The translations under genes were made by a program, and so were the position numbers. A model generated the notes under the pieces. The model saw only the letters and a list, made by a program, of their open reading frames with translations, ran no database searches and had not been told where the DNA came from. From positions 7,750,001-7,814,000 of the forward strand of contig NC_043016.1 in the NCBI RefSeq assembly GCF_006345805.1: 64,000 nucleotides of DNA, in the 5' to 3' direction. Of this stretch, positions 31,130 through 60,715 are shown piece by piece (the first letter of the stretch is position 1; each line of letters starts with the position of its first letter). The DNA comes from Octopus sinensis (Eukaryota).

Positions 31130-31581
31130 TAAAATTTTTTATCTATAATTATTACATTATTATGTATTTTTCATTTTCCTTCAATTTTATTTCCATTTCT
31201 TTCCGAGTGTCTTCCCGACACCTAGGGCAAAGACACTCATTGTGTACATTGATAAGTCATTAAAATAAACACACCAGATTGTTCATTTACAAAATTAAAT
31301 TAAGTCGTATGCTCTTAACATTTCCCAGTTAGTAAATCTTCTAGTAGCTCAAAGCTTTCAAAGATGACTACATGGGAGGTAAGCGTCCTCACTGTGACAA
31401 GGTTCTTCTCAACAAGTGTGACGTACCAGTTAAAACATTTTTTTGCATTTCTCGCGGGGACGGTAAGCTATGGATAATTCTCAAATACCTTTCAGTTCCT
31501 TTTTTTTGGTCATTCTTAGAGTTCCTACAATCACTGGTATTGTGACAACCTTGAAATGCCACATTTTTTCATAAACACTTT
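31130..31581 (-). mobile_element. R4/Dong-like LINE 3' fragment (REL C-terminus + 3' UTR)
   Basis: EKMWHFKVVTIPVIVGTLRMTKK; 3' end CCTAGGTGTCGGGAAGACACTCGG...AATAATGTAATAAT, also present at 29510-29590 and 36153-36236. Confidence 0.78.
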
Positions 31582-34500
31582 CGACACCACTACTGCCACT
31601 ACCACAGACACAAACAAACACAGACACAATTACAGACACGATTACAGCAGTGAATACAAGAAACCAGGAACTGGTTGAGTATTTGAAAAACAAAACAAGC
31701 ACAAACATTACAGATTTCATAATACCTACACACAACACACCACCAGCACACATTCTCACAATAAAAATAAACAAAACAGTTTACAGCGAAATAAAACAAA
31801 TATTCCCTAACGATGTGGGATCGTTAGGGAAAAGTTTCTCTCAGAAACTTTACAAAAATATTATTGAAGCACCCGTGCAAAAGCACAAGGGAGCCACCCC
31901 CACCACCAACAACAGTAAGTAGAGCCTTTTTTCTCCTTTTTTTCCCCTAACTTTTGAAACATGGCAAATCTTAGAATCGGTTGCTTGAATGTGAGAGGCC
32001 TCGGGTCACCTTGGAAACAGGGTCACCTGTTAAACGACCTGAGGTTTCATGATGTGGATGTAGCAGCCATCAGTGAAACCAGGCTCTCCGACCCGCAGGA
32101 ACTCGCAGCCCTTTTCGGCGGATACGAGATATTTCTATCTCCGTGTCGGCCGGGAGCGGGCGGTGGTGGTACTGGGGTGTGTTGTTTCGGAAGGGCCTGG
32201 ACCTGAAAATAAGGACAGTCTTCTTGGATCCGGAAGGTAAGTTGGTGGTCCTCGACGTCGACGGTAGTGACGGCGGTGCTTTCAGACTGCTGGCTGCCTA
32301 CGCTCCGACAGGAGCAGGGCAGTCGGATTATTTCAAACGTCTGGAAGTTTTCCTGGGAACGTCACGCACTCTAGTACTAGTTGGGGATTGGAACGCTGTC
32401 TTAGACGAACGTTTCGATCGGGTGGGCAGGGGAGCGTCTGATAGGAGAGGGGGAGGGTGCAAGAGCCTCGCCAACCTACTCGGCCGCTTTCAGCTGTCCG
32501 ACAGGTTTCGACTAGACAACCCGAATGTGCCAATGTGGACTTGGACAAACCGCATCGGGTCGTCTAGATCGTACTTAGATAGAGTGTTTTGTAGGCCAGC
32601 GGATAAGGACAGCGTAGGGTGTCCACAATTCCACCTAGTCGAATATACGGACCACAAATTAGTGATCTGTACGGTCGACTTAGATAGGCTACATAGACAG
32701 GGACCCGGCTACTGGAAGCTGAACGCGTCGTTAACGGCGTGCAAAGCTTACAGAGACCGGATTAGTTTACTAGTTAAGCGGGCGCTCACGGGGGCAATCA
32801 TCAACAACAACTGGTGGTTTGCCCTCAAGAGAGCAATTAGAGTAGAGTCGATTAGGTATAGTAAGACTCTAGCTATTGAACGTAGGAAGAGAGAGCGGGA
32901 TTTAGTTAAGAAACTAGACGAGGCTCTTGACACTGGCATCGCGACCGACGTGTTGGCGGCAAGGTTGGCCCTCGACCAACACTTCGACGCCAAACACGAA
33001 GGCTGCGTTGTCAGAGCTAAGGCACGTTCGCTAAGCGGGGAGGGGACTAGAGCCGCTCGATGGGCCCGCGTGGCGGAGGCGAAGCGAGGCAACAGAGCAA
33101 CCATTCGGTCTTTGGTGGACCAGAACGGGCGCGAGGTTACCCAACCGAAGCAGATGTGTACGGTGCTTCAGCGGCACTTTGCTCAACTGTTTGGGACGAG
33201 CGGTGGAACGGACACCAACGGTACAGACTTCGGTGTGTACCTGGACGGACTGCCGCAACTCTCGGACAGCGAGGCAGAGTGCTGCGAAGGACCGATATCT
33301 GCCTGGGAAGTACAGGAAGCGATGAAGAGTTGCACGAGAGGTAGATCGCCGGGTTTGGATGGTCTGCCCTACGAGCTTTACTTTTCAATGCCAGACTTGT
33401 TTGCGGACCTGTTGGCAAACGTCTACTGCAACTGGCAGCAAAACGGGAGAATTCCTGCTTTTGTCTGTCGAGGGGTGGTGGCTTTGCTAAAGAAGGACCC
33501 AAACAAGGGGGACGTTATAGGGAATTTCCGGCCCATCACTCTGCTCAATGCAGAGTTGAAGATTTTGGCCAAGGTGCTAGCCAAGAGATTGGCGCTTGTC
33601 GTGGACAAGCTGGTCGGCGGGACGCAGACATGCGCCGTGCCGACCAGGTCGATACACGACAACCTCCATCTCATGCGCTACATCATAGAGAGGGTGGGTA
33701 ACGACGCTGGCGCGGGTGGGGCTTTGATCAACTTGGATCAGAGTAAAGCCTTCGATAGGGTCGACCATCGGTACCTGGCAGCTGTCCTCAGGGCAGCCGG
33801 CTTCGGTCCAGTCTCCGCGGGTGGATCGCTGCTTTATACAGCAACATCTGCTCGGTGATACGGGTGAACGGTCACCTTTCGGACCGTTCGACATCTCGCG
33901 TTCGGTCCGCCAAGGATGCCCTCTCTCCTCCCTCTTGTACATTTTGACTCTCGAGCCATTACTGCGCAAGTTGGAGGCTTTGAGGGGCATCCCGCGCGAT
34001 CTAGGAGGCGGAAACAGCGTGTCTGCTTATGCCGACGACGTCACCGTGGTGGTGTCGAGCCACAGGCACATTGGCCTGATTGGCGAGACGCTAAACCAGT
34101 ACGAAGCGGTGACAGGGGCAAAGATTAACGCGGAAAAGTCTGTGGGCTTGCAACTGGGCACCTGGAGAGGCAAGCCCATGCCGTCCAACAGCGTCGTAGG
34201 GCGCTGGACAGACGGACCCGTTAAACTGCTCGGGGTCTGGTTCGGTCCGGACCTCCAGGTGGATAAGAACTGGAAGAGGTGACGAGCAGGGTGGCACGTC
34301 TCACCCAGAAATGGGCCGAGAGGAAGCTGTCCCTGAAAGGTCGAGCGGAGGTGGCGAATGCGTACATCGCATCCGTCATCTATTACCGCTTGACCGTCGT
34401 CCCTTGTCCCGACCGCTGGTTGGCCAAGCTGGTACGCCTGCTCTTCGACTTTTTGTGGAAGGGTCAGGTGCCACTGGTCAGGCGATCCATCTGCTGTCAA

Positions 34501-35672
34501 CGACCGCTGAACGGAGGCCTTGGAATGCCGTGGTTGCTGTTGCGCAGACATGCGCTCAGGCTGCGGCATCTCAAGCGCTTCCTAGACGGTGAACAGGTGT
34601 GGTCGTCTTTTGTCAGACGCGATTTTCCGCAGCTCGTCTCTTTGACGGAGCTGCAGACCTGGATCAAACGTAGACCGAGAAAGGGCGCTTGGCACCTCGA
34701 GTGCCGTCAAGCCCTCTCCGCCCTCCGCCAGGCGGGCAATGCGGTCGGTTACAGCTCCACTCTAGCGTTCTATAGAGGGTTAGTGGAGGAAAAATGCGAC
34801 GACGTTCTCGGGGAAACTCTAGGCGTTGAAGACGACGAACTGAGCGGTCTGTTCGGAGGACTTTCGGGCGGGGCCGATGGATAATTTCCAGAGGTCTCTC
34901 GCCTGGCAGTGCTACCGAGGGGCTCTGCCTGTTCGAGATAAACTCTACCGGCACGGAAGTGCCGTCAGCCGGGCCTGCCCGAGGTGTTGCCAGGACGACG
35001 AAACCGTTCTGCACGCACTCGTCCAGTGCCCGAGTATTGCTGAAATATGGGTTTATGTCGAACAGCTACTGTCACGTGTAGGACGGATCCGACTATCGGC
35101 CGAATCCATAGTGAAGATTGCCCCGCCGACCTCCTTTAACAAGGAGGGCGAGGCCGTTTTCTTGTGCCTAGTGGCTGTGGCGAAAGAGGTGGTGTGGTGG
35201 ACTCGTTTGAAAGGGCTAAAGTCAGACACTTTCCTCTTTGGTCAAGGCCTCATCAACTTTTTCAAGTTTCACTTGAAAAGGAAGATGAGGTTAGAGAGGA
35301 AAGTGCTGTCCGATAGCAAGTTTTATGAAAGGTGGGTGAATTGTGCGAGACTGGCCTGTATAAATGGACCAGTTCTCAGGTTTCGCCTGTGATTTCAAAA
35401 AGGTAATACAAAAGGAGAAAAAAGGGGACTCTCTACACCCCCTTTTTTGACCAGGCTCCCGTTGGCTTTGTAGGGTTTTTTCCACCAGGAACCTTTCGAG
35501 ACGTCTCCCCCTTTTGGGAGTTTTTCATTGTTGAATTTTATAAGTTGTTATAAAGATTTTTACTCGATGTTTTTAAAAAAAAAAAACGGCAAAACCCTTT
35601 GTAACCTTTCGTCCTGTCTTGTCCCTTTATGTAATCATGCGTGTCAGCCCTTGTGGCCAATAAAAAAGAATT
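31582..35672 (+). mobile_element. Tx1-clade L1 LINE copy 3: ORF1 C-terminus, ORF2, 3' UTR, followed by (ATT)n
   Basis: ORF1 tail ends SK* at 31922; ORF2 starts at 31961; 3' end CCCTTGTGGCCAATAAAAAAGAAT. Confidence 0.95.
31961..35392 (+). CDS. Tx1 ORF2 (APE endonuclease + reverse transcriptase + C-terminal CCHC), ~1140 aa, split by about four 1-bp frameshifts
   Basis: MANLRIGCLNVRGL, AISETRL, AYAPTG, VGDWN, SYLDR, YTDH, SPGLDGLP, FRPITLLN, LDQSKAFDRVDH, RQGCPLS, YADDV, CPRCCQDDETVLHALVQC; no in-frame stop codons noticed within the segments. Confidence 0.88.
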
Positions 35673-37388: not shown

Positions 37389-37620
37389 AGCGGTGAGCTG
37401 GCAGAAACGATAGCTCGCCGGGCGAGATGCTTAGCGGTATTTCCTCTGCAGTTACGTTCTGAGTTCAAATTCCGCCGAGGTCGACTTTACCTTTCTTCCT
37501 TTCGGGTTCGACAAATTAAGTACCAGTTACGCACTGGGGTCGATGTAATCTACTCAATTCCTTTGTCTGTCCTTTGTTTGTCCCCTCTATGCTTAGCCCC
37601 TTGTTGGCAATAAAGAAATG
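37389..37620 (+). mobile_element. SINE family A inserted into a SINE B, 14-bp TSD
   Basis: TSD AAAACAACACCGTC (37375-37388) / AAAACAACATCGTC (37621-37634). Confidence 0.9.
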
Positions 37621-39300: not shown

Positions 39301-40641
39301 TTTACCTCTGCAACTTCGGCAACCTAGCTAGCCGCAGAATCCCACTTCATCAACTTGCCAGTTTGCTTCAGCTGTCCGTGTCTCTCGGTCTGTCTATCTC
39401 TCTCTTCAAGCTGTAGCAATCCTGCCGCTTGTGTCCACCAAGTCTCCCACAGTGCCAGCAACACATACCAGTCATCTCTTCATTCTTCTCACATGGTCCA
39501 CGACAATTCCCAAGTCCTTCAGCTCCATGGATTTTTCCTCTCTTTGCCTGGAATCCGGAGCTGTAACTCACCCGGAAATTTCCGGTGCTAGATTTGATGT
39601 ACGATTCAAATTCCAGAGCCCTAGCCAGCGCACCCTGCCATAGTACTTGGCCGCATCTGCTTCACTTGGACCTTGAGATTTGCATTGTCCAGAGAATCTA
39701 TAAATTGTTCCTTCAAACGAAGAGACAAAAGGTCGGGGCTAGCTGTAGGGTAGGCTTTATGCACCGTGCCCTCCAAGTCCTGGACAAGCTGCTATAGGGG
39801 CTCCCCTCTAGACATAGGAGCGGAAGCGTGTCCTGTACATTTCACTCTGGCACATAGTGTCATATTTCCTCTGAAGAGCTTCTACCAGCGTCGAGTAACG
39901 ACCCCTGTCTACTTCTGACAGCCGGTCCAGCAACTTCAGTGCAGGACCCTTCAAACTGGTGGCAAACTGAACGGCTCTTTGCCCCTCGTCCCAATCATTC
40001 TGGTCCGCCAGCATCTCAAACTGGATTCGGTAGGCCTCCCAAGATACTTTGACATCAAATTCCTGTGGATTTTTCCTAATGGGGACTACGCAGTTACATT
40101 TAACCCGGGGAGACCCGGACCCAGACGTCGGAGCATTACAATATGGCGCAGCAACAGCAACTACTTCTGGCTCAGCAATCTTACGCTCAGTAGCACAAAG
40201 TTTCTCCACGCACTCCATTCTCTTGTCAAGCCTGTCCATTTGTTGCTTGCACCATGTGACATCATCACTCATTTCGCGTAACTCTTTCGTAAACTGTTGG
40301 TGACTTTCCTGCAATCGATGTTGCTCTTTCTCCATTATTCCCATAAAAGCTTCCAGCTGATCTTGAAGCTGCGTTTGCTGCGTTTGCAGCGTTTGCAGCG
40401 CCTTCTGCTTTGCTCTTTTAACATCTGCACAATTGTAGCCAGTGATGTCTCTTCCTTCCTTGCCCGTCTCCTCGTACGTGCTCCCTCCGAGGCCATAGCG
40501 GGTAACCGACTCACTGCAGCAATGAATATCCCACTTCTGACAATAGTTGTTGCGCTGCACGCGACCCTCCGATGCTACCACGGGTCCCCACACAAAGAGC
40601 CCGCAGTTTGCTGGCCCAGAGAAGCCCATGGATGTTGTAGC
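39300..40641 (-). pseudogene. Ty3/gypsy LTR retrotransposon 5' remnant: short LTR piece, tRNA-Leu PBS, gag with zinc knuckle; no pol
   Basis: PBS TGTCAGAAGTGGGAT (40528-40542), complementary to the tRNA-Leu(CAA) 3' end; gag FDVKVSWEAYRIQFEMLADQNDWDEGQRAVQFATSLKGPAL; CWHCGRLGGHKRQDC (39416-39460). Confidence 0.85.
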
Positions 40642-40988
40642 ATGGAAATCTAGATTTACTTACGGAGACAGCAACTGAGTATCGCCTGAGGAGGAGATAC
40701 ATATAGATCTTCTTAAATAGGTAAATCGTTGCATAATTAATTTAAACTCAACTTTAAATCTTGTATATACGAGGATCTGTATGTATCGAAATATTTGTAG
40801 CGATTAAAAAGCTTCCTAACTCTTCATTTTGACTCTTGACTCTTTTACTTTTTACTTTTTATTATATATATATATATATATATATATATCTATATAATAG
40901 ATAAATTTCCTCTATTTACATAATATTGAGGTCTCTTCTTTCTTTTGGTTTACCGTTTTATCAATATATATATATATATATATATATA

Positions 40989-42558: not shown

Positions 42559-43579
42559 CTAGCAGTATCGCCGGCGTTGCTCGGGTTGTAAGGGAAATAA
42601 CTATATAAGCATTTTAGAGAGTTATAGCCAAAAAAATAGCAAAAAATGCATAAAAAATTGAAAAAAAAATTAAGGTAATTTTTTCTTTAAATCGTTGACA
42701 CATCGTAGATATTTTTAGAGAGTTACTTCCTTATATAAAAGCGAAAAAAATGCATTAAAATGGAAAAATATGATGGTAATTTTTTTTAAATCGTAGACTC
42801 ATCGTAGACGCGCGCTAATACCCAGAAGGGCTCGTTTGTTATTCTGGGTAACTTTCTGTAAAATTATTAAAATTTTGTTCAAACATCGCTATAGAAAATG
42901 GGTTATTAGGTAATATTCAATTGGGTATACAACAAAATTTTACAATAGAATTTGTATTCTGGGTAACTTTCTGATACCCATAATAATATTTATGGCAAAA
43001 TAGCCTTAATTTCACTTAAGGTTGTGGGAAATAACAAACTCTCCTTTCTTTCGGTTGTTTACGTTTAGCGTAATGATTTCAAATAGGCTCATTCGAAAAA
43101 GTAAATAGGAATAGTCTAAGGCTTACTCTTCTGGGAAAGTCTGTGGCTTGGTCCAGTTTCTTCAGAAAAACTCACCGAAAGAAACAGTTTTTAAATTTTC
43201 ACTCCATTCAGGTACCAATTCGTTTTCTTTATCGCTGTCGGATTCACTGTTTTCACTTTAATAGCTGCAAACTTGCAAAGACAAAGGAGGAGAAGGGGGT
43301 GATAGCGTCAGTGAAACAATTCGCTCCCTTTGTGTGTGTGTGCGTTTGCGTGTGGTGTAAACCAGACTAAGAAAAGATTTGCATGACACAACACACCAGA
43401 ATGTGAGTTTTCTGTAAATTTTGCTTAATTGGAGTTTAAATTTTAAAAACTGGACCTGGCATGACGCGATGCATTGTACTCTTAAAAATGGTAGGTAAAT
43501 TGTAATTGAAGAAATCCTATATTGTAGATTTGTAAACTCCCAAAGGGAGGCAGATAAAATCTGCCTTTATAATAAGAGA
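42559..43579 (-). mobile_element. Non-autonomous Helitron (chimeric)
   Basis: 5' TCTCTTATTATAAA; 3' CCCGAGCAACGCCGG hairpin + CTAG|T; 3' ~280 bp shared with 44987-45619. Confidence 0.8.
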
Positions 43580-43654
43580 TATATCTCTTATTAAAGATTT
43601 GTATAACTCCCAAAGGGAGGCAGATAAAATCTGCCTTTTATAATAAGAGATATA

Positions 43655-43922
43655 TCTCTTATTATAAAAGGCAGATTTTATCTGCCTCCCTTTGGGAGTT
43701 ATACAAATCTACAATATAGGATTTCTCAATTACAATTTACCTAGCAGTTTTAAGAGTACAAACGCATCGCGTCATGCCAAGTCCAGTTTTAAAATTTAAA
43801 CTCCAATTAAGCAAAATTTACAGAAAACTCACATTCTGGTGTGTGTGTCAAATGCTTTCTTAGTCTGGTTACACCACGCGCAAATGCACGCACACAGTGG
43901 GCAACGAATAAAGTGAAACTAG
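43655..43922 (+). mobile_element. Helitron-like 5' segment, head-to-head with 42559-43579
   Basis: A|TCTCTTATTATAAAAGGCAG start; ~240 bp inverted-identical to 43333-43579; possible CTAG end at 43919-43922. Confidence 0.65.
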
Positions 43923-44534
43923 ATGTAATATTTGTTTTCTCTCTATCACGCTGATAGATACATGAGTAAAATGTATGGGAAGCTAACACATAAGGGTGAG
44001 TGAAATGTTCTGGAAGAGAGTAAATAGCCAGAGAGTGATTTGAGGAAGACTACATTAAATAACCGTAGTGGCTTGGTTAGTAATAAAGTTAAAATACACT
44101 CATACATACATACATAAATACATACATACATACATACATACATACATACATACACACACACACCACACACCACACACATACATCATACACACACACATAC
44201 ATACATACATATTACATACATATACATACATACATATACATACATACAACACACACACAACATACACACACACACACAGTATTGAAGCTTGAGAACAATC
44301 AGATACATTTGCAACACATCTGTTGAAAATATCATTGTTCACACACATACATATACATATATACATACAGACAGACAGACCGATAGACACACACACACAC
44401 CACATGATCCAGCATGGCCACAACCTCAGGCTGGAAACATATAAAGAATAAAGAATATAAATGTGTGCATGTGTGTGAGAGAGAAAGTGTGTGTGTATAT
44501 GTATGTATGTATGTATGTATGTATACATATATAA

Positions 44535-44970
44535 TAATGCGGGTTTTTTCAACAGCTTGAACTAAAAGTCAGAGGGGAATGGGATAAACTACTTATATTA
44601 ATTGCTATAAAAAGCAGGTAGTAATTTTATCTTGTCCTTATTCATAGTGCAAGTTTGAAGAGTGCATTTCGATTTTAACAGCTATTTTTTTCAAAAGCTA
44701 TATTGGAACAGCCTAGAAGACGAGCCTCATCCTGAAAGATCTGTTAGAACTCGACAAGGACATCCTGAAAACCCTGGTGGAACAAAATCTCATCGTAACT
44801 GGTGAGGAACTAGCAGAGAAGCTTGGATTTGGTCATTTCAACCATTCATGAGACCTGTGTGCTATCGGAAAAAGTCAGCAAATTGGGTCAATGGGTTCCT
44901 CACGAACTTTCCGAGTCTAATTGCATGCAGAGAGTGAATGTATGCTTTTCTTTGCTGTCAAATCTCACCA
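44535..44970 (+). pseudogene. mariner transposase N-terminal (HTH) fragment
   Basis: SLEDEPHPERS...LKTLVEQN...EELAEKLG...GKVSKLGQWVPHELSESN. Confidence 0.8.
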
Positions 44971-44986
44971 TACTGCGCTATGTATA

Positions 44987-45619
44987 TCTATATATATAAA
45001 CTGTAGTTGTGTGAGTGTCTGTCCCTTCGATTTAGATTCCTAACTACTCCCACATGTTTGCGGGGTGCAGTTTAACCAAATTCGGGTAGCTTATAGTCGT
45101 GATTGATATCGAGCCGTCTGAGTATTAGCGCGCGTTCTACGATGAGTCTACGATTTTAAAAATAAGTAACATCTTTTTTATTCCATTTAATGCATAATTT
45201 TTCGTGTTCGATGGCGGCGGAGTTGGCGTCCACGCTCACACCTGCACACTGTGGGGAAGGGAGTGTTAAGGAATCAACGTCGTAATGCGTTGTCAAGGAG
45301 ACCAGCGTTCTTTTAGAACAACGACTTCATGGCTTGAAGACACCAAAACAGAAATGGCTAAGAAAGCGTCTACATGAGTCTACGATTAAAAAAAAAAATT
45401 TACCATCGTTGTTTTTCCATTTTAATGCATTTTTTCGCTATTATATAAGGGAAGTAACTCTCTAAAATGTCTACGATGAGTCAAACGATTTTTTCAAAAA
45501 ATTTACCATCATATTTTTTCCATTTGAATGCATTCTTTGCTATTTTGGGCTATAAACTCTCTAAAAATGCTTATAGTTATTCCCTTACAAACCCGAGCAA
45601 CGCCGGGCGATACTGCTAG
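44987..45619 (+). mobile_element. Non-autonomous Helitron, 633 bp, complete
   Basis: A|TCTATATATATAAA ... CCCGAGCAACGCCGGG hairpin, CGATACTG-CTAG|T. Confidence 0.9.
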
Positions 45620-45709
45620 TATATATATATATTATGATATATATATATATATAATATATATATATATATATACATATATAATATATACATATATATAATA
45701 TATATATAT

Positions 45710-45742
<33 letters not shown>

Positions 45743-45765
45743 TACATATATATAATACATATATA

Positions 45766-46030
45766 TAACGGGAAGCTTTATGAAAATAAACAAAAAGACG
45801 AAGGCAGGTGGAAGACCAAACGAACAATTGTATTAGATGGCGCTCAGGAAATATAATTAAAACAAGTCTTTAACGTTTCGAGCCTACGCTCTTCAACAGA
45901 AAGATACAAGAGAGAGAAAAACACAGAAAGAAGGAGAGAAAAAAATGCTGTGCAGTAGCTAACGAATCAACATGGCGATCTGATTTCGGCCAGAGGTCAA
46001 AGATCAACATGAGACGCGAGAGCGGAATAT
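45766..46030 (-). repeat. Penelope-type terminal repeat, second copy, with minimal hammerhead motif (45867-45904)
   Basis: Minus TCTTT-CTGTTGA-A-GAGC-GTAG-GCTC-GAAA-CGTT-AAAGA. Confidence 0.72.
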
Positions 46031-46049
46031 AATATATAGTATCTATATA

Positions 46050-46102
<53 letters not shown>

Positions 46103-46384
46103 ATATATATATGTAAAATATGTATATATATATGTATATATATGTATACATTAATCATATATATATATTTAATATAAATATATATATATTATATATAATA
46201 TATATATATACATATATATATATATAATTATATAGTATATATATATATATATATATAACAATATATAATATATTATACATATACTATATACCATATATAT
46301 ATATATATATATATACATTATATATATAATATATTATATATATATTATATATATATATATATATACATATATCTATTATATATT

Positions 46385-46426
<42 letters not shown>

Positions 46427-46427
46427 T
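46030..46427. repeat. (TA)n-rich array
   Basis: Direct reading. Confidence 0.95.
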
Positions 46428-47595
46428 TTGATAGGTTTCCGCCATTATTGGCCCAGGCCCATGTCTAAACTTAATAGCACCACCTGGTGAAGTCTTTCAA
46501 GTCAGAATTGGGCACTATGGCCACTCAAGTAGAGAGTTATTGTTACAGAGACATATCCGGGTGTTGTAGGGTGTTTATCCGGGATTTCTTGAAGGAATCT
46601 GTCCAAAGACTTCTTGAACCCTATAGGGTCAGTTTGTGTTTTAATGTGTTTTGGTGTAATGTTAAAGAGAGCGGGGCCAATTGAGGTGAAATAATTGTGC
46701 CCTCTTTTTGTTATGAGATGAGAGTGCGATTTTGTTTTGGGCGGATGGCACGGGGCCCAAGCCTTGGAGTACCTTGACGGTGATGCCAACATCATTGGGC
46801 AATGCTGATGGAATATTTTCCCACATCATGCAGATGATGTAGCGCTCACGACGACGTTGAGAGAGAAAAGAGTTTTAGCTTTTCTAGTCGACCCCAATAG
46901 TCGAGGCCTGTCATGCCATCTATCTTTTTTGTGATTGCCCTTTGAGGTGCTCAACTTTTATGATACCTTGTATTGTGTGGGGAGACCACAGTGGACAACA
47001 GTATTCAAGGTGGGGTCGGGCAAAAAGTGGAGAAGAAGAAGGAAATAATGGTGTGGATATCTCTCGACTGGAAAGTTCTGAGAATCCAGGAACACATTCT
47101 GCGGGCCATGTCAACTTTGGTTGTTTATATGAGTGGCCCAGCTTATGTTGTTGTCCACAATACTCCCAAGTCTCTGATGTTGTTGGACGCCGCGAGAGTT
47201 TCACTGAAGGAAGGGAGTTGGGAGTTTCAGGGCATCCTCTTTTCCAAGTGGATTAGCTCAAATTTATCCTCGTTCAGCAGCATATTGTTTTTTTCTGCCC
47301 ATTGGATAACAGCCAGTAGATCTGACTGAAGGCATGTCCGGTCACTCGCCTCATTTATGACCTTCTGTAGCTTGGAGTCATCTGCAAGATTTTTATGTTG
47401 CGTGGCTTGATGATGTCATTAATGTCATTAATGTAAATGATGAAAAGAAGTGGGCCCAGCACAGTGCCTTGCGGAACGCCACTAATGACTTTGGCTGGGC
47501 TTGATTTTACCCCTTCAACTACAACATGTTGAGATCTGTCTGTCAGGAAACAACTTGATCCATTTCAGTAACTTTCCAGAGACACCAATGTTGGA
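46428..47595 (-). pseudogene. CR1-clade LINE, 5'-truncated (RT C-terminal half + 3' UTR)
   Basis: SGVPQGTVLGPLLFIIYIND, ADDSKL, RPHLEYCCPLWSP, YWGRLEKLKLFSLQRRRERY, FKKSLDRFL. Confidence 0.9.
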
Positions 47596-47762
47596 TATAT
47601 ATATATACACGCGGGTGGGAAGGGGCTGGTGACACAATCTTTTCATTCACAATTGATTTGGTGATACTAGTTGCGGATTCTAGCTCGCTCTGATACTGAG
47701 TTGGAGTTGGTGCATTTCTAGTATATCAAAATTCAATATATAATCATTTATGATTATAGTAT

Positions 47763-47863
47763 TCTACGCTGAAGAGAAAAGAAGTTTTGGTGAGATAGAA
47801 TTATAATATTTAATTCTTATGCTTTCCTAAAAACTGATTCGAAACGAAACGTACGTCCGTAGA
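47763..47863 (+). ncRNA. Type I hammerhead ribozyme, unit 1 (extra CGAAA duplication)
   Basis: TCTACG-CTGAAGA-G..C-GAAA-CGTACGTC-CGTAGA; predicted cleavage after C47857. Confidence 0.8.
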
Positions 47864-48348
47864 TAACTTAAAATTGTTATGATAGATTGCCGTCAATTCA
47901 TTCTCTCTTACCTGTTTGTGTCTGCCTTCCAATTGCTGTTTTTTGAGATCTCCCTTTTTAGTAGAAGAAATAGCTATAACTCTTTGACTGCTATTTCTAA
48001 ATCGGTATGTGGTAAGGCAATTCGTTGCTAAAACTCTTTATTGCTTAGTATTACTTAAATTTTCCTCGAATGAGGCTTTTACATGCCGAAGACTACTTGG
48101 TGTAATGATAATTATTCAAATAATTAAGTTTCACCCTCATATTACGGATAACCATATTTTATCTCAGTAGATGACCACAGCATCTTGTTTTGGCTACACG
48201 CGGGTGGGAAGGGGTGGTGACACAATCTTTTCATTCACACATTGAATTTGGTGATACTAGTTGCGGATTCTAGCTCGCTCTGATACTGAGTTGAGTTGGG
48301 CCTTTAGTATCTCCAAATTCAATATATAATCATTTATGATTATAGTAT

Positions 48349-48445
48349 TCTACGCTGAAGAGAAAAGAAGTTTTGGTGAGATAGAATTATTTAATATTTA
48401 ATTCTTATGCTTTCCTAAAACGATTTCGAAACGTACGTCCGTAGA
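48349..48445 (+). ncRNA. Type I hammerhead ribozyme, unit 2 (complete canonical core)
   Basis: Stem I TCTACG/CGTAGA; CUGAAGA 48355-48361; G10.1-C11.1-closed long stem II; GAAA 48428-48431; palindromic ACGTACGT stem III; GUC 48437-48439. Confidence 0.88.
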
Positions 48446-48925
48446 ACTTAAAATTGTATGACAGATTGCCGTCAATTCATTCTCTCTTACCTGTTTGTGT
48501 CTGCCTTCCAATTGCTGTTTTTACTGAGATCTCCCTTTTTAGTAGAAGAAATAGCTATAACTCATTGACTGCTATTTCTAAATTCGGTATGTGGTAAGGC
48601 AATTCGTTGCTAAACCCTTTATTGCTTAGTATTACTTAAATTTCCTCGAATGAGGCTTTTACATGCGAAGACTACTGGTGTAATTGATAATTATTCCAAA
48701 TTAATTAATTTCACCCTCATTATTACGGATAACCATAATCTCAGTAGATGACCACAGCATCTTGTTTTGGTACACGCGGGTGGGAAGGGGCTGGTGACAC
48801 AATTTTCATTCACACATTGAATTTGGTGATACTAGTTGCGGATTCTAGCTCGCTCTGATACTGAGTTGAGTTGGTGCCTTTAGTATCTCAAATTCAATAT
48901 ATATCATTTATGATTATTATAGTAT

Positions 48926-49026
48926 TCTACGCTGAAGAGAAAAGAAGTTTTGGTGTGAGATAGAATTATTTAATATTTAATTCTTATGCTTTCCTAAAAA
49001 CTTGATTTCGAACGTACGTCCGTAGA
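48926..49026 (+). ncRNA. Type I hammerhead ribozyme, unit 3 (GAA instead of GAAA)
   Basis: Same fold; one A missing at 49010-49012; GUC 49018-49020. Confidence 0.75.
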
Positions 49027-49334
49027 TAACTTAAAATTGTATGATAGATTGCCGTCAATTCATTCTCTCTTACCTGTGTGTCTGCCTTCCAATTGCTGTT
49101 TTTACTGAGATCTCCCTTTTTAGTAGAAGAAATAGCTATAACTCTTTGACTGGCTATTTCTAAATTCGGTATGTGGTAAGGCAATTCGTTGCTAAACCTT
49201 TATGTTAGTATATATATATATATATATAGTCATCAAAAAAAGGGGTAGAATTAATTAATTGTTAATAAATTCGACCAAGCAGTATTCGGTATGTAAAGAC
49301 CATTACGGTTATTTTATATATATAATATATATGC

Positions 49335-49562
49335 TGGCGAGCTGACAGAAACGTAGCACGCTGGGCGAAATGCGTAGCCGTATTTCGTCTGCCGCTACGT
49401 TCTGAGTTCAAATTCCGCCGAGGTCGACTTTCCCTTTCATCCTTTCGGGGTCGATAAATTAAGTACCAGTTACGCACTGGGGTCGATGTAATCGACTTAA
49501 TTCGTTTGTCTGTCCTTGTTTGTTCCCTCTGTGTGTAGCCCCTTGTGGGTTAAAAAGAAACA
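49335..49562 (+). mobile_element. SINE family A
   Basis: Head, core, Tx1-like tail. Confidence 0.9.
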
Positions 49563-50261
49563 TATGTATATACATACACATATATAAATACACGCAAACA
49601 TAAATACATGTATGTATGTATATATAGTGGCAGCAATTAATCCGGTCCCTAGGTCTAATTATAGTGAGGAGAGAAGAATCGAACGGTTATGAGTGTGGAA
49701 GAGAGGGATTGAAAAGGGGAAAAGAGAGTGGGGGAAAGAAGACGGGGAGAAAGGATGGGGGGGGGGGAGAAACAGAAAGCGAGAAAAGAGATTTGGACTG
49801 TATACAAGTAAATGATGAAGGAACGGGAGTGGAATGAGTGCAGAGACGGTGGTGATAGAGTGGGTGTGGGGGGAGAGGAACAAATGTTTTGTGTGTGTGT
49901 GTGTTTGTGTGCGTGTGTTTCAGAAGTCTAGGGTGTGAAGTGGATAAGAGGTAGTGGGAGTGGGAAAAACTAAAAGTTGTAGAGGGTGGTGATGGAAAAA
50001 GTAGAAAATGAAATGAAAAAAATTGAGGTGTTCGTGTAAAAACGGGTGGGTGGGGGGGGGCGGGGGAAGGGGCAGCTGCGAGAAGCAGTTGCGAGAGGTA
50101 AAGTGAAACCGCACCTTACAGAAACGATTTGAGTATAAAGACATATATAGAATGGGATGTTCTTCGTTCGAAACGAAGGGAGTATCTAGGCACCTTTTTG
50201 TAAAATATGGGGTGTGCGCATCTGTGTGTGTGTGTGTATTGCGGTAAAAAAATTTGATTTT

Positions 50262-51016: not shown

Positions 51017-51832
51017 ACATAGGTAATCGATTTTTTTTTATTTCGTGTACTTTCATTTGTCTTGCTTATTTTTACACTTTGGTTTTTTGCTGAATTTTTT
51101 CTTGAGAACACATTCTTCGTGGAAAATGGCGAGTTTGACGTCTATATCTAGCAGATAGGCTGTCCATTTTTTTTAGTGGTCAGTCCTCTAAATTTTGTAT
51201 GTAAAAAAATGTTTAATCTTCGGATTTTTTTGTAAATATGTTAAGCCACTGGTTTTAATTGATCAATATCAATTTCTACCCTTATTTAATTTTAAATTAA
51301 AAAAATGTTCTCCAGCCGGTAAATTGACTGCTGTAGTTTATTAACTGCAGAGTAATTTCCGATCTTAGCGCGCCAAAGTGAAGGCATTTGAAAGATACAC
51401 ATAAATATAATTTGTGGGACTTTATACATGCTAGATTTCGGTCGAGCGTTTCTGTATCTAGTTCTGGAAATTGTGTTTTGTAAACGACAGACTATGCTGA
51501 TGATCTTGCAGATGTTTGCGTATCCATATACGTAAATATTAACAAGTGAAACTAATTAGTACATAGGTAATCGTTTTTTATTTTGTATATTTTCATTTGT
51601 CTTGCTTATTTTTACACTTTGTTTTTTTGCTGAATTTTTTCTTGAGAACACACTCTTCGTGGAAAATGGCGATTTTGACGTCTATATCTAGCATAGGCTG
51701 TCCATTTTTTTAGTGGTCAGTCCTCGAAATTTTGCATATAAAAAACTTTTAATCTTCGGATTTTTTAAAAATATGCTAGGTAACTGGCTTTAACTGATTA
51801 ATATCAATGTCTACCTTTATTTAATTTTAAAC
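51017..51832. repeat. Direct repeat of ~280 bp (51017-51298 and 51558-51832)
   Basis: TACATAGGTAATCG...TTTATTTAATTTTAAA present twice, roughly 85-90% identical. Confidence 0.85.
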
Positions 51833-53365: not shown

Positions 53366-53844
53366 TATTCATTTTTTAATTTTTTTTACTATTTTTAGTC
53401 ATTTGAGTGCGGCCATGCTGGAGCACAACCTTAACGGATTTTAGTCGAAGAAATCGACCTCAGAACTAATTCTTAGTAAGCCTAGTACTTATTCTATCGG
53501 AATCGTTTGCTGAACCACTAAGTTACGGAGAAATAAACACACCAGAATCGGTTGTCAGGTATCCAATGGTATGTATTTGAATCGAGTATCCAGTGGCATG
53601 TATTTGAAGAAGACAGTTAAGGGTTTATTAAATACAATACAACATAAATTAATAATTTATTAAAATTATCTCCAACTCTAGATAATGTGTCATAGTTATA
53701 TGTATATTGTACATATATATATATATGTGTGTTTATTTGTGTACGTATGTATACATGTCTATGTGTGTGTATGTGTACGTGTGTGTGTGTGTACTTGTAT
53801 AGTATGTGTGTAATAATGATATAATAATAATAATAATAATAATA

Positions 53845-53917
<73 letters not shown>

Positions 53918-53918
53918 T

Positions 53919-55593
53919 ATGCCCTGATGTAGTACCAGACAGTGGCTCTCATGGTTTCTGATCTTAACTGATTGGAAGTGTTATCATGTACATTGCTTTG
54001 TCTTGGTACAAAATATGGGCTACAGCAAATATTTAGCTCAATACCACAGATTTGCTTGTCAGTTGCTTGACCTTAACCAGTTGAGCATGTCCCTTAGTGG
54101 CTGACGATATGTGCATCTCTGATCACGAGCAGAAGTAGTGGGGGAGCATCATACCATGTGTTGAGAGGGATTCTTTGGGGTTTGAATAATTCACCTCTGG
54201 AAACATGGGTGGTTCTTTCAACATCCTTAAACAACCCTTATTCAGGGACCTTTTGAGCGGGATGGGCTACTCAACCTGAAGAAAATTCTAACTGGGCCCC
54301 ACCTGCAAGGTCATGTGCTGTTTATCTTGATATGAGATCACCATGTCACGCACATATGGTTGTGATGCATGTGCCTGGTGTACCCTTATCAGACGGGTAG
54401 TCATGATGGGTATATTGGGCTTCGTATATTTTACCCCAGTGTCACTTTGATGGCATGCACTGCTCTCTCACTCAATAATAATAATAATAAATGCCCTGAT
54501 GTAGTACCAGACAGTGGCTCTCATGGTTTCTGATCTTAACTGATTGGAAGTGTTATCATGTACATTGCTTTGTCTTGGTATAAAAGATGGGCTACAGCAA
54601 ATATTTAGCTTAATACCACAGATTTGCTTGTCAGTTGTTTGACCTTAACCAGTTGAGCATGTCCCTTAGTGGCTGACGATATGTGCATCTCTGATCACGA
54701 GCAGAAGTAGTCGGGGAGCATCATAGCCATGTGTTGAGAGGGATTCTTTGGGGTTTGAATAATTCACCTCTGGAAATATATGTGTTTCGTTCATCATCCT
54801 TAAACAAATCTTGTTCAGGACCTTTTGAGCGGGATGGGCTACTCAACCTGAAGAAATTCTAACTGGGCCCCACCTGCAAGGTCATGTGCTGTTTATCTTG
54901 ATATGAGATCACCATGTCACGCACATATGGTTGTGATGCATGTGCCTGGTGTACCCTATCAGACGGGTAGTCATGATGGGTATATTGGGCTTCGTATATT
55001 TACCCCAGTGTCACTTTGATGGCATGCACTGCTCTCTCACTCAATAATAATAATAATAAATGCCCTGATGTAGTACCAGACAGTGGCTCTCATGGTTTCT
55101 GATCTTAACTGATTGGAAGTGTATCATGTACATTGCTTTGTCTTGGTATAAAAGATGGGCTACAGCAAATATTTAGCTTAATACCACAGATTTGCTTGTC
55201 AGTTGTTTGACCTTAACCAGTTGAGCATGTCCCTTAGTGGCTGACGATATGTGCATCTCTGATCACGAGCAGAAGTAGTCGGGGAGCATCATAGCCATGT
55301 GTTGAGAGGGATTCTTTGGGGTTTGAATAATTCACCTCTGGAAATATATGTGTTTCGTTCATCATCCTTAAACAAATCTTGTTCAGGGACCTTTTGAGCG
55401 GGATGGGCTACTCAGCTTGAAGAAAATTCTAACTGGGCCCCAACTGCAAGGTCATGTGCTGTTTATCTTGATATGAGATCACCATGTCACGCACATATGG
55501 TTGTGATGCATGTGCCTACTGTACCCTTATCAGACGGGTAGTCATGATGGGTATATTGGGCTTCGTACATATGTCCTCCGGTGTCACTTTGAT
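53919..55593 (+). repeat. Three tandem ~570-bp units joined by (AAT)n linkers
   Basis: Units start ATGCCCTGATGTAGTACC at 53919, 54491, 55060 and end CTGCTCTCTCACTC; long (AAT)n upstream. Confidence 0.92.
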
Positions 55594-55846
55594 TGCACGA
55601 GTCGGGTTTTTACATGGAATGCTGATGAGGTGATTGCTTGGATTGTAATTATCCATCAAATATTATATTTATATATATATATCCTTTCGGAGTAGATGTA
55701 TAAATTAGTATCAGTTGAGCACTGGGGTCGATGTAATCGACTTAGCTTCTCCTGGCTGTGAGTATAAAAATTGCACCTCTCTCTCTCTCTGCCAAGCCAT
55801 TTCGAGCCAGTGTGACAGAGCAGACTCATTAAACCAGTTTGATATC

Positions 55847-56263
55847 TATTTCTTTACTACCCATAAGGGGCTACACACAGAGAGGACAAACAAGGACAGA
55901 CAAACGAATTAAGTCGATTACATCGACCCCAGTGCGTAACTGGTACTTATTTAATCGACCCCGAAAGGATGAAAGGCAAAGTCGACCTCGGCGGAATTTG
56001 AACTCAGAACGTAACGGCAGACGAAATACCTATTTCTTTACTACCCACAAGGGGAGCTAAACACAGAGAGGACAAACAAGGACAGACAAACGGATTAAGT
56101 TAATTATATCGACCCCAGTGCGTAACTGGTACTTAATTTATCGACTCCGAAAGGATGAAAAGCAAAGTCGACCTCGGCGGAATTTGAACTCAGAACGTGA
56201 CGGCAGACGAAATACCGCTAAGCATTTCGCCCGGCCTGCTAACATTTCTGCCAACTCGCCGCC
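55847..56263 (-). mobile_element. SINE family A dimer (full unit 56031-56263 + 5'-shortened unit 55847-56030)
   Basis: Junction GACGAAATACC|TATTTCTTT. Confidence 0.9.
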
Positions 56264-60099: not shown

Positions 60100-60455
60100 T
60101 TCGGGGTGGGGACTAGTCGATTACATCGACCTCAGAGTTTCCGGGTACTTAATTTATCGACCCCGAAAAGTAAAGTCGACCTCGGTGGAATTTGAACTTA
60201 GAACGTAGCGACGGGCGAAATACCTATTTCTTAATTGCCCACAAGGGGTTAAACATACAGGGGACAAACAAGGACAGACATAGGTATTAAGTCGATTACA
60301 TCGACCCCAGTGCGTAACTGGTACTTAATTTATCGACCCCGAAAAGCTGAAAGGCAAAGTCGACTTCGGTAGAATTTGAACTCAGAACGTATCGGCAGAC
60401 GAAATACCACTAAGCATTTCGCCCGGCGTGCTAATGTTTCTGCCAGCTCGCCGCC
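60100..60455 (-). mobile_element. SINE family A full unit (60225-60455) joined to a 5'-shortened A-variant unit
   Basis: Junction GGCGAAATACC|TATTTCTT at 60224/60225. Confidence 0.85.
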
Positions 60456-60715
60456 TTTTTTTTTTTCATATAAGATATGATGCAAATCGATCACAAAAGA
60501 TTTTATTTATAAGGCACATGCATGGCTGGATAGTTAAGAAGATCACGTGGTTTCAGGTTTAATCTTACTGAGTGATACGTTGAGCAAGTATCTTCTACTA
60601 TAAGCTCGGGTGAACCAATGACTAGTGAATGGCCTTCCAAGGTGGTGCCCCAGCACGGCTGCAGTCCAATGACTGACACAAGTAAAAACAAACGATAAAA
60701 GATAACTATAAACAT

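What the first reader, a model, noticed from the sequence alone, without database searches (positions are those of the whole stretch)
47606..49208. Hammerhead-ribozyme tandem array (retrozyme-like) predicted to release a ~581-nt circular RNA
Seen: three ~581-bp ORF-less units in tandem. Each contains a type I hammerhead: 6-bp stem I (TCTACG/CGTAGA), CUGAAGA, a G-C-closed long irregular stem II of ~65 nt (GAAA/TTTC, GTTTT/AAAAC, GG/CC, AGAATTA/TAATTCT), GAAA, a self-complementary ACGTACGT stem III and a GUC triplet. Predicted cut sites after 47857, 48439 and 49020 give monomers of 582 and 581 nt. Established: metazoan non-LTR retrozymes are tandem type I hammerhead repeats processed to abundant linear/circular RNAs and proposed to be mobilised by Penelope-like RTs; palindromic stem III favours dimeric cleavage. 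Inference: this is a retrozyme family with an unusually long monomer (reported animal monomers are mostly shorter, as I recall) and an extended stem II. Penelope remnants occur in the same window.
Basis: partly seen in the sequence, partly recalled or inferred. Interest (0 to 1): 0.92.

Follow-up and report, generated by a model that had tools for sequence, protein, structure and literature searches.

The report
Hammerhead-ribozyme tandem repeat in octopus
An octopus genome segment carries 2.76 head-to-tail copies of a ~581-bp non-coding repeat, each with a self-cleaving hammerhead ribozyme motif; this is an ordinary member of the known animal "retrozyme" class, notable mainly because it sits in a (TA)n microsatellite that is uninterrupted at the matching Octopus vulgaris site.

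Summary
Window 47606-49210 contains 2.76 tandem units of 575-590 bp with no conserved ORF and 35% GC. Each unit has a type I hammerhead motif on the + strand, and the predicted cut sites (after 47857, 48439, 49020) are correct. A strict hammerhead descriptor hits only this array and 0 of 100 shuffled windows. Rfam's Hammerhead_1 model scores only 18.9 bits against a threshold of 34, with a 68-nt insert in helix II where the model has 12 positions.

Cofolding predicts the classical double hammerhead through the ACGUACGU palindrome. The monomer RNA is unusually stable only in + polarity.

Only unit 2 has a fully canonical core. Unit 1 has a CGAAA duplication and unit 3 lacks one A of GAAA. However, nearly all differences between units are small indels, which looks like long-read assembly error, so these defects may not be real.

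The host is an Octopus. At the orthologous O. vulgaris locus a 6.8-kb composite segment (42559-49332), which includes the array, is absent and one uninterrupted (TA)n tract takes its place.

Best reading: a young non-LTR retrozyme array. The "unusually long monomer" claim fails, because published consensus lengths reach 972 bp. New member of a known kind; modest interest.

The parts
47595..47607 (.). Left (TA)n flank. Its last TA is shared with the first bases of the unit (TACACGCGGG), giving junction microhomology.
   Evidence: Sequence read.
47606..48195 (+). Repeat unit 1 (590 bp).
47763..47863 (+). Hammerhead motif 1. The core is present, but a CGAAA duplication lies between helix II and GAAA. 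Predicted cleavage is after C47857.
   Evidence: Rfam RF00163 at 18.9 bits; strict descriptor hit; sequence.
48196..48770 (+). Repeat unit 2 (575 bp).
48349..48445 (+). Hammerhead motif 2, fully canonical. Helix I is UCUACG/CGUAGA. The core is CUGAAGA, G10.1-C11.1 and GAAA. Helix III is AC[GUAC]GU and the site is GUC. Cleavage is after C48439. Helix II has a 4-bp base (GAAA/UUUC) plus an irregular extension of about 55 nt.
48771..49210 (+). Repeat unit 3, partial (440 bp). It ends at unit position ~445 in TTAGTAT, which merges into (TA)n.
48926..49026 (+). Hammerhead motif 3. It reads GAA instead of GAAA (a 1-nt deletion in an A run). The nominal cleavage site is after C49020.
49208..49228 (.). 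Right (TA)n flank.
42559..49332 (.). A 6,774-bp composite segment absent from the orthologous O. vulgaris locus, where a single (TA)n tract stands. It contains:
- a terminal-inverted-repeat (TIR) element, 42559-45619
- (TA)n tracts
- a short dispersed repeat, 45755-45946
- a 5'-truncated LINE on the - strand, ~46480-47590
- the hammerhead array
- an 85-bp unknown piece
25920..26165 (+). A diverged relative (~75% identity) of unit positions ~315-530. It has no hammerhead and ends in (TA)n, which shows that part of the unit is dispersed in the genome.
   Evidence: blastn; Smith-Waterman score 145 against shuffles of 66 +/- 10, maximum 95.

Best explanation
This is a young array of a non-autonomous, hammerhead-bearing retroelement of the metazoan non-LTR retrozyme kind, in an Octopus genome.

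Proposed mechanism:
1. The + strand is transcribed as a multimer.
2. Helix III of each hammerhead is only 2 bp plus a GUAC loop, so a single motif is weak.
3. The palindrome ACGUACGU lets two motifs pair into a double hammerhead, with an 8-bp helix III and helix I formed in trans.
4. Cleavage after GUC yields ~581-nt monomers with 5'-OH and 2',3'-cyclic phosphate ends.
5. An RtcB-type ligase circularises the monomers.
6. A reverse transcriptase supplied in trans copies the circle or multimer more than once round at a nick in a (TA)n tract. Penelope-like elements are the favoured source. This gives a tandem insert of non-integer copy number with TA microhomology at both ends.

Shown here: the motif, the tandem structure, the predicted dimer fold, the strand-specific RNA stability, the (TA)n context, and the absence from the O. 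vulgaris orthologous site.

Inferred only: transcription, cleavage, circularisation, and the identity of the reverse transcriptase.
For: - Tandem units with a type I hammerhead in each.
- The strict descriptor gives 0 hits in 100 shuffles.
- Helix III and both core strands match the Rfam Hammerhead_1 consensus (CUGA+GAG and CGAAACG..CGUC).
- The double hammerhead is predicted for every pair of motifs, ddG -10.6 to -13 kcal/mol.
- The monomer folded as a circle has z = -4.0 and -5.7 in + polarity but -1.3 in - polarity.
- No ribozyme was found on the - strand.
- GC is 34.7-34.9% and there is no conserved ORF.
- Both ends lie in (TA)n with microhomology.
- The orthologous O. vulgaris site has an uninterrupted (TA)n.
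- Substitutions between units are 0.5-1.2%, against 2.1% for the orthologous flanks, so the array looks younger than the species split.
- PLEs prefer microsatellites, including (TA)n for the Naiad clade (PMC8557442).
- O. vulgaris has 31 recently active PLE families (PMC13282606).
- Retrozymes are reported to be related to PLE terminal repeats (bioRxiv 10.64898/2026.07.22.740005).
- RtcB circularisation was shown for mussel and axolotl retrozymes (PMC7229834).
Against: - Rfam's gathering score is not reached.
- As assembled, two of the three cores are flawed.
- Helix II has no thermodynamic or covariation support.
- No second full copy of the unit could be found. There are none elsewhere in the window, none in 20.5 kb of O. 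vulgaris, none in metagenome or viral collections, and no protein-database trace.
- No PLE coding sequence lies near the array. The only GIY-YIG-like fragment is weak and 46 kb away.
- LINEs and a TIR transposon also sit in the same (TA)n tract, so the target site does not single out PLE machinery.
- Similarity between units could come from concerted evolution rather than youth.
- The absence in O. vulgaris could be a deletion or an assembly collapse between (TA)n tracts.
Confidence: 0.7

Rival explanations
1. The units are tails of an autonomous Penelope-like element. They would be heavily 5'-truncated head-to-tail PLE insertions (stacked pseudo-LTRs), made by the PLE's own insertion mechanism rather than by a separate non-autonomous family that cycles through circular RNA.
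For: PLEs carry type I hammerheads with palindromic helix III in their pLTRs, form partial tandems and prefer microsatellites. The 2026 preprint places retrozymes next to pLTRs phylogenetically. The window holds other hammerhead pairs in the inverted arrangement typical of PLE insertions.
Against: No PLE reverse transcriptase or endonuclease coding sequence lies beside or inside the array. Three consecutive units share the same ~581-bp period, rather than one truncated copy preceding a full element. I could not obtain any octopus PLE terminus to compare; the search seeded with the EN-like fragment found nothing.
Confidence: 0.15
2. This is a DNA-level local tandem duplication (satellite-like) of a single hammerhead-containing fragment, produced by slippage or unequal exchange in a microsatellite-rich region. 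The ribozyme would be a passenger with no RNA-mediated life cycle at this locus.
For: Only 2.76 units are present and no second full copy was seen. The region is full of (TA)n tracts and another ~570-bp tandem repeat lies at 53.6-55.7 kb. Two of the three cores are imperfect as assembled.
Against: The RNA structure excess is strand-specific. The array ends show TA microhomology to the target tract rather than flanking remnants of a single-copy parent. The palindromic helix III and dimer fold are the features expected of a repeat processed as a multimer.
Confidence: 0.1
3. The copy number, or the array itself, is an assembly artefact: a long-read mis-assembly of one unit, or a wrongly placed contig end inside a (TA)n tract.
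For: Differences between units are almost all small indels: 16-24 indel events against 2-7 substitutions per pair, 42 of 62 being 1 nt and 35 of 62 in homopolymer context. That is a long-read error signature. The region is missing from the O. vulgaris assembly. The window contains a 100-N scaffold gap at 15776-15875.
Against: The three units also differ by a few substitutions and multi-base indels, so they are not one read copied three times. The flanks on both sides of the composite segment are collinear with O. vulgaris. Even if the copy number were wrong, the unit and its hammerhead would still be real.
Confidence: 0.05

Closest known systems
Metazoan non-LTR retrozymes (Cervera and de la Pena 2020, PMC7229834; mussel, coral and axolotl examples)
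   Same: A type I hammerhead once per unit; a head-to-tail tandem array; no LTR and no ORF; low GC; a short palindromic helix III that implies dimeric cleavage; 6-bp helix I and a 4-bp base of helix II.
   Different: The monomer is ~581 bp, against the 170-400 nt described in that paper, though it lies inside the 51-972 bp range of the 2026 preprint. Loop 2 is replaced by an irregular extension of about 55 nt. Expression and circularity are untested here. Retrozymes have not been described in cephalopods in the searchable literature.
Hammerheads in Penelope-like element pseudo-LTRs (Cervera and de la Pena 2014, PMC4209133)
   Same: Type I topology, palindromic helix III, a conserved G10.1-C11.1 pair, a larger-than-usual helix II, tandem or inverted arrangements, and insertion into microsatellites.
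   Different: PLE min-HHRs usually lack helix III or have a 4-5 bp helix I. This one has the canonical 6-bp helix I and a 2-bp helix III with a tetraloop. No PLE ORF is attached.
Hammerhead satellites of newts (satellite 2, ~330 bp), Schistosoma (Sm-alpha) and Dolichopoda cave crickets (pDo500, ~500 bp); the last two are cited from memory
   Same: Tandem repeats transcribed and self-cleaved to monomers. The CGAAACG..CGUC signature is the same as the Rfam Hammerhead_1 consensus built from such sequences.
   Different: Those are very high-copy satellites. Here only 2.76 units are seen at one locus and the genome-wide copy number is unknown.

Membership tests
Hammerhead ribozyme, type I (Rfam RF00163) | Conserved core: C3U4G5A6N7G8A9, G12A13A14, the A15.1-U16.1 pair, and H17 at the cleavage site. 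| tested here: met
   Complete in units 1 and 2. Unit 3 lacks one A of GAAA as assembled; this 1-nt homopolymer indel may be an assembly error.
Hammerhead ribozyme, type I (Rfam RF00163) | Three helices around the core, with helix I open-ended. | tested here: met
   MFE folds keep the 6-bp helix I and the long helix II. With helix III enforced, or in the dimer, the full junction forms, including the G10.1-C11.1-closed 4-bp stem.
Hammerhead ribozyme, type I (Rfam RF00163) | Score at or above Rfam's gathering threshold (34 bits). | tested here: not met
   No hit at gathering. Unit 1 scores 18.9 bits, E=0.33, in a 2-kb search. The alignment places a 68-nt insert in helix II where the model has 12 positions, and the rest of the alignment matches the consensus core.
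Hammerhead ribozyme, type I (Rfam RF00163) | Helices supported by compensatory changes among family members. | tested here: inconclusive
   Only three near-identical copies are available. Their differences fall in loops and bulges. No further copies were retrievable.
Hammerhead ribozyme, type I (Rfam RF00163) | Site-specific self-cleavage. | not testable with these tools
   This needs in vitro transcription of monomeric and dimeric constructs.
Metazoan non-LTR retrozyme | Head-to-tail tandem repeat with one type I hammerhead per unit. | tested here: met
Metazoan non-LTR retrozyme | Non-coding, no LTRs, low GC (<45-50%). | tested here: met
   The longest open frame is 75 codons and is not conserved between units. 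GC is 34.7-34.9%. There are no terminal repeats other than the unit itself.
Metazoan non-LTR retrozyme | Monomer size within the described range. | tested here: met
   581 bp is outside the 170-400 nt of PMC7229834 but inside the 51-972 bp range of bioRxiv 10.64898/2026.07.22.740005.
Metazoan non-LTR retrozyme | Multi-copy and dispersed through the genome. | tested here: inconclusive
   There is one diverged partial relative at 25920-26165. There is no copy in 20.5 kb of O. vulgaris. No octopus genome was searchable.
Metazoan non-LTR retrozyme | Expressed as unit-length linear and circular RNA. | not testable with these tools
   No transcriptome access. The only indirect sign is strand-specific predicted RNA stability.
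Penelope-like element (pLTR of an autonomous copy) | A hammerhead-bearing repeat flanking an RT plus GIY-YIG ORF. | tested here: not met
   No PLE-type RT or EN motifs within the 6.8-kb segment or its flanks. The neighbouring RT fragment is LINE-type and on the opposite strand.
Penelope-like element (pLTR of an autonomous copy) | Sequence homology of the unit to PLE termini of the same genome. | not testable with these tools
   No octopus PLE consensus was available. The seed search from the EN-like fragment returned nothing.

The most novel reading that the evidence does not exclude
Octopus hammerheads may form a lineage-specific structural variant in which loop 2 is replaced by a 55-95-nt extension. 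At least three unrelated hammerhead-bearing element families in this one window share the feature: the array, the inverted-repeat element at 12.6-12.9 kb, and the pair at 38.7/40.7 kb. The extension might act as a functional module, for example a handle for the mobilising reverse transcriptase or a brake on cleavage. On this reading the array is a very recent insertion (absent at the O. vulgaris orthologous site, units no more than ~1% diverged by substitution), so retrozyme mobilisation would be ongoing in octopus. That would give a natural before/after insertion site in which to study the integration mechanism.
Probability: 0.25. Interest if true: 0.5.

Novelty: new member of a known kind. 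Interest (0 to 1): 0.3.

Why it matters
If confirmed, this extends retrozymes to cephalopods, where the searchable literature only records Rfam hammerhead counts for the giant squid. It also provides an apparently filled-versus-empty site pair between two close octopus genomes, with TA microhomology at both junctions of the array. That bears on the still-unproven model in which circular or multimeric retrozyme RNA is copied into microsatellite nicks by a reverse transcriptase supplied in trans. It does not change the known picture of what retrozymes are.

Tried and rejected
- TRF cannot see the array because its period limit is 500.
- Rfam at gathering threshold finds nothing in the window. 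The 218 sub-threshold hits in the whole-window E-value search are almost all microsatellite 'miRNA' matches.
- No further copies could be retrieved:
  - exact-product look-ups of two unit ORFs
  - a protein homology search with a 75-aa unit frame
  - two metagenome pattern scans and one viral scan
- A search seeded with the GIY-YIG-like fragment, meant to reach octopus PLEs and compare their termini with the unit, found nothing.
- A crude motif scan for PLE RT and EN motifs in six frames found none.
- I suspected the 85-bp piece at 49229-49313 was a second fragment of the unit that would define a common 3' end. Its alignment score (31) equals the shuffle mean (30 +/- 4.5), so I rejected it.
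- The hammerhead-like match inside the 53.6-55.7 kb tandem repeat has a U-G closure of helix II and a mostly G-U helix I. I judged it to be chance.
- There are no tRNA-like parts in or near the unit.
- The exact look-up of the window's own gag-like ORF, meant to identify the source assembly, found nothing.

Full report
**1. What is there**

Reading 47000-50000 and repeat finding show a head-to-tail repeat. The units are 47606-48195, 48196-48770 and 48771-49210.
- Unit 2 matches unit 1 at 92.8% and unit 3 at 94.0% including gaps.
- The total is 1605 bp, or 2.76 units of ~581 bp.
- Tandem Repeats Finder missed it only because its longest period is 500.
- The array is bounded on both sides by (TA)n. 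Both junctions show microhomology: the unit begins TACACGCGGG after ...ATATA, and the last unit stops at TTAGTAT, where the full unit continues TAC and the flank continues ATAT.
- The longest open frame is 75 codons and the frames are broken differently in each unit.
- GC is 34.7-34.9%.

**2. The hammerhead**

Each unit contains UCUACG CUGAAGA G[helix II]C GAAA CGUACGU C|CGUAGA. This is type I topology. Helix I is 6 bp. Helix II has a G10.1-C11.1-closed 4-bp base followed by an irregular extension of about 55 nt. Helix III has two pairs closed by a GUAC loop, inside the palindrome ACGUACGU. The cleavage triplet is GUC.

*Rfam.* Hammerhead_1 finds nothing at its gathering score. In a permissive 2-kb search it reports only unit 1, at 18.9 bits against 34, E=0.33. 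The alignment matches the core and helix III consensus and carries a 68-nt insert where the model expects 12.

*Chance.* I wrote a descriptor and ran it on 100 dinucleotide shuffles of the window, both strands.
- The strict form hits only units 1 and 2 and no shuffle.
- A loose form hits 11 places against 1.0 expected.

The motif is therefore not a chance match, and the window as a whole is enriched in hammerhead-like motifs.

*Structure.* The minimum-energy folds keep helix I and the long helix II but are not more stable than shuffles (z -0.6 to -1.2). Helix II therefore has no independent support.

*Dimer.* Helix III costs 2 kcal/mol as a hairpin. Cofolding two motifs gives exactly the double hammerhead: an 8-bp intermolecular helix III, helix I formed in trans, and the canonical junction. 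It is 10.6-13 kcal/mol better than two monomers for every pair tried.

**3. Integrity of the three cores**

Unit 2 is canonical. Unit 1 has CGAAACGAAACG, a 5-nt duplication at the junction of helix II and the core. Unit 3 reads CGAACG, one A short of the invariant GAAA. As assembled, then, only one of three ribozymes is intact, and release of a monomer needs two cuts.

The differences between units are very odd, though.
- With careful pairwise alignment there are 2-7 substitutions (0.5-1.2%) but 16-24 indel events (3.8-5.2%) per pair.
- 42 of 62 indels are single bases and 35 are in homopolymer context.
- The orthologous comparison with O. vulgaris shows 2.1% substitutions and only 0.8% gap openings.

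An indel-dominated spectrum confined to a tandem repeat looks like unpolished long-read error. Both core 'defects' are indels, so I do not trust them either way.

**4. The RNA as a whole**

Folded as a circle from cut site to cut site, the + strand monomers have MFE -152.7 and -140.8 kcal/mol. Shuffles give -117 and -118 (z -5.7 and -4.0). The - strand has z -1.3. No ribozyme family matches the - strand. This strand asymmetry is what one expects of an element selected as a + strand RNA. It is unlike a viroid-like agent that carries ribozymes in both polarities.

**5. Host and the orthologous site**

The gag-like ORF at 39808-40629(-) is 95% identical to an Octopus vulgaris protein, with weaker hits in O. 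sinensis and O. bimaculoides. Fetching that gene's locus gave L001 (O. vulgaris GCA_951406725.2, OX597829.1). It is collinear with window 29.0-57.8 kb at 95-98% identity.

Window 42559-49332 has no counterpart there. In O. vulgaris the sequence ...ACACACATGCA(TA)n runs directly into the SINE that starts at window 49333.

The 6.8-kb segment is a stack of elements separated by (TA)n tracts:
- a TIR element, 42559-45619, flanked by TA
- a short dispersed repeat, 45755-45946
- a 5'-truncated LINE on the - strand, ~46480-47590
- the hammerhead array
- an 85-bp piece of unknown origin

A LINE at 31.6-35.6 kb is also absent from O. vulgaris. O. vulgaris in turn has a ~500-bp element that the window lacks at 53.72 kb. 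Presence/absence differences of transposable elements therefore go both ways.

The array's substitution divergence between units (at most 1.2%) is below the 2.1% between the orthologous flanks. That fits an insertion after the two lineages split. Concerted evolution, a deletion between (TA)n tracts in O. vulgaris, or an assembly collapse there cannot be excluded.

**6. Relatives**

The only other similarity to the unit in the window is 25920-26165. It is about 75% identical to unit positions 315-530, has no hammerhead, and ends in (TA)n. No copy is present in L001. Searches outside the window found nothing. Genome-wide copy number therefore remains unknown.

**7. Penelope connection**

The nearest reverse transcriptase remnant is LINE-type (RVT_1, SGVPQGTVLGPLLF) on the opposite strand. 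The only PLE-like coding trace is a GIY-YIG-like fragment at ~1140-1350(-), interrupted by a SINE. Its Pfam E-value is 0.036, below threshold.

The literature supports the link in general.
- PLE pLTRs carry such hammerheads and occur in tandem or inverted arrangements (PMC4209133).
- PLEs prefer microsatellites, with (TA)n noted for Naiads (PMC8557442).
- O. vulgaris has 31 recently active PLE families (PMC13282606).
- Vertebrate retrozymes group with PLE pLTRs (bioRxiv 10.64898/2026.07.22.740005).

Since a LINE and a TA-targeting TIR element share the same microsatellite, the target site alone does not identify the mobilising enzyme.

**8. Comparison with what is known**

The element works like, and meets the testable defining features of, a metazoan non-LTR retrozyme (PMC7229834).
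- The monomer is longer than the 170-400 nt of that paper. It is well inside the 51-972 bp range later reported, so the size is not remarkable.
- Hammerhead_1 matches were already counted in a cephalopod genome: 235 in the giant squid (PMC6962438).
- I found no description of retrozymes in cephalopods.
- The long helix II is the most unusual trait, and it recurs in two other hammerhead families of this window. It looks like a habit of the lineage rather than a peculiarity of this array.

**9. Verdict**

This is a new member of a known kind. The most useful aspect is the apparent filled/empty site pair in a (TA)n tract. Interest 0.3.

Noticed in passing
window 12545-12960, both strands (hammerheads at 12674-12589 on - and 12825-12910 on +): An inverted-repeat element of ~400 bp with a hammerhead motif in each arm on opposite strands. 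Helix I is AUUUUC/GAAAAU and the core has CUGAAGA. Helix II is a 12-bp stem with a ~30-nt loop, closed by G-U instead of G-C. Helix III is the palindrome ACAUAUGU and the site is GUA. The - strand motif folds with z = -4.0. The element is flanked by TA-rich repeats, which matches the 'dual HHRs on opposite strands' described for PLE-related sequences.
   Followed up: partly
window 38844-38724 (-) and 40680-40805 (+): A third hammerhead family: UAUCGC CUGAGGA, an 8-bp-based helix II of ~95 nt, GAAA, helix III ACAUUUGU, site GUA. The two copies are in inverted orientation and flank a retrotransposon gag-like ORF (39808-40629, -). The + copy ends in (TA)n. Both copies are conserved at the orthologous O. 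vulgaris positions (L001 11527-11647 and 9656-9530).
   Followed up: partly
window 51491-51567 (+): A single hammerhead-like motif with CUGAUGA, a 10-nt palindromic helix III (ACUAAUUAGU) and a GUA site, but a non-canonical U/U at the base of helix II. It is identical in O. vulgaris (L001 5911-5835).
   Followed up: no
window 53600-55700 (+): A second tandem repeat of ~570-bp period. It has more copies here than in the O. vulgaris ortholog. Its hammerhead-like match (54667-54792, 55235-55360) has poor helices and is probably chance.
   Followed up: partly
window 31574-35669 (+): A LINE with long open APE and RT frames (571-aa ORF plus downstream frames). It is absent from the orthologous O. 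vulgaris locus and is apparently a recent insertion. An older, fragmented copy of a similar LINE lies at ~16.3-23.2 kb (-).
   Followed up: partly
window 42559-45619: A ~3.1-kb element with terminal inverted repeats (CTAGCAGTATCGCCGGCG...), flanked by TA and absent from the O. vulgaris ortholog. A ~500-bp element with both ends of the same family sits in O. vulgaris (L001 ~3010-3575) at a site that is empty in the window (53.72 kb).
   Followed up: partly
window 1140-1350 (-): A GIY-YIG-like fragment (NLIYCIISSQCNRKWIGETGIKLTSRVNIHK; Pfam E=0.036, below threshold), cut by a tRNA-derived SINE. It is the only candidate Penelope-like coding remnant I could find in the window.
   Followed up: partly
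window 49333-49560; also ~25025, 37390-37620, 55840-56260, 60115-60460: Many copies of one SINE family (GCTGGCGAGCTGACAG...GGGTCGATAAATTAAGTACCAG). ARAGORN finds no intact tRNA in the 45-52 kb stretch scanned, which includes the 49333-49560 copy.
   Followed up: no
window 47606-49210 compared with window-wide: Differences between the array units are about five times richer in small indels than the window-versus-O. vulgaris comparison, and poorer in substitutions. This suggests poor polishing of tandem repeats in this assembly. A 100-N scaffold gap lies at 15776-15875.
   Followed up: yes
window 25701-25922 and 45755-45946: A short dispersed repeat (85% identity between the two copies) that starts right after a (TA)n tract. 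At 25.9 kb it abuts the diverged relative of the hammerhead unit. Whether the two form one composite element is unknown.
   Followed up: no
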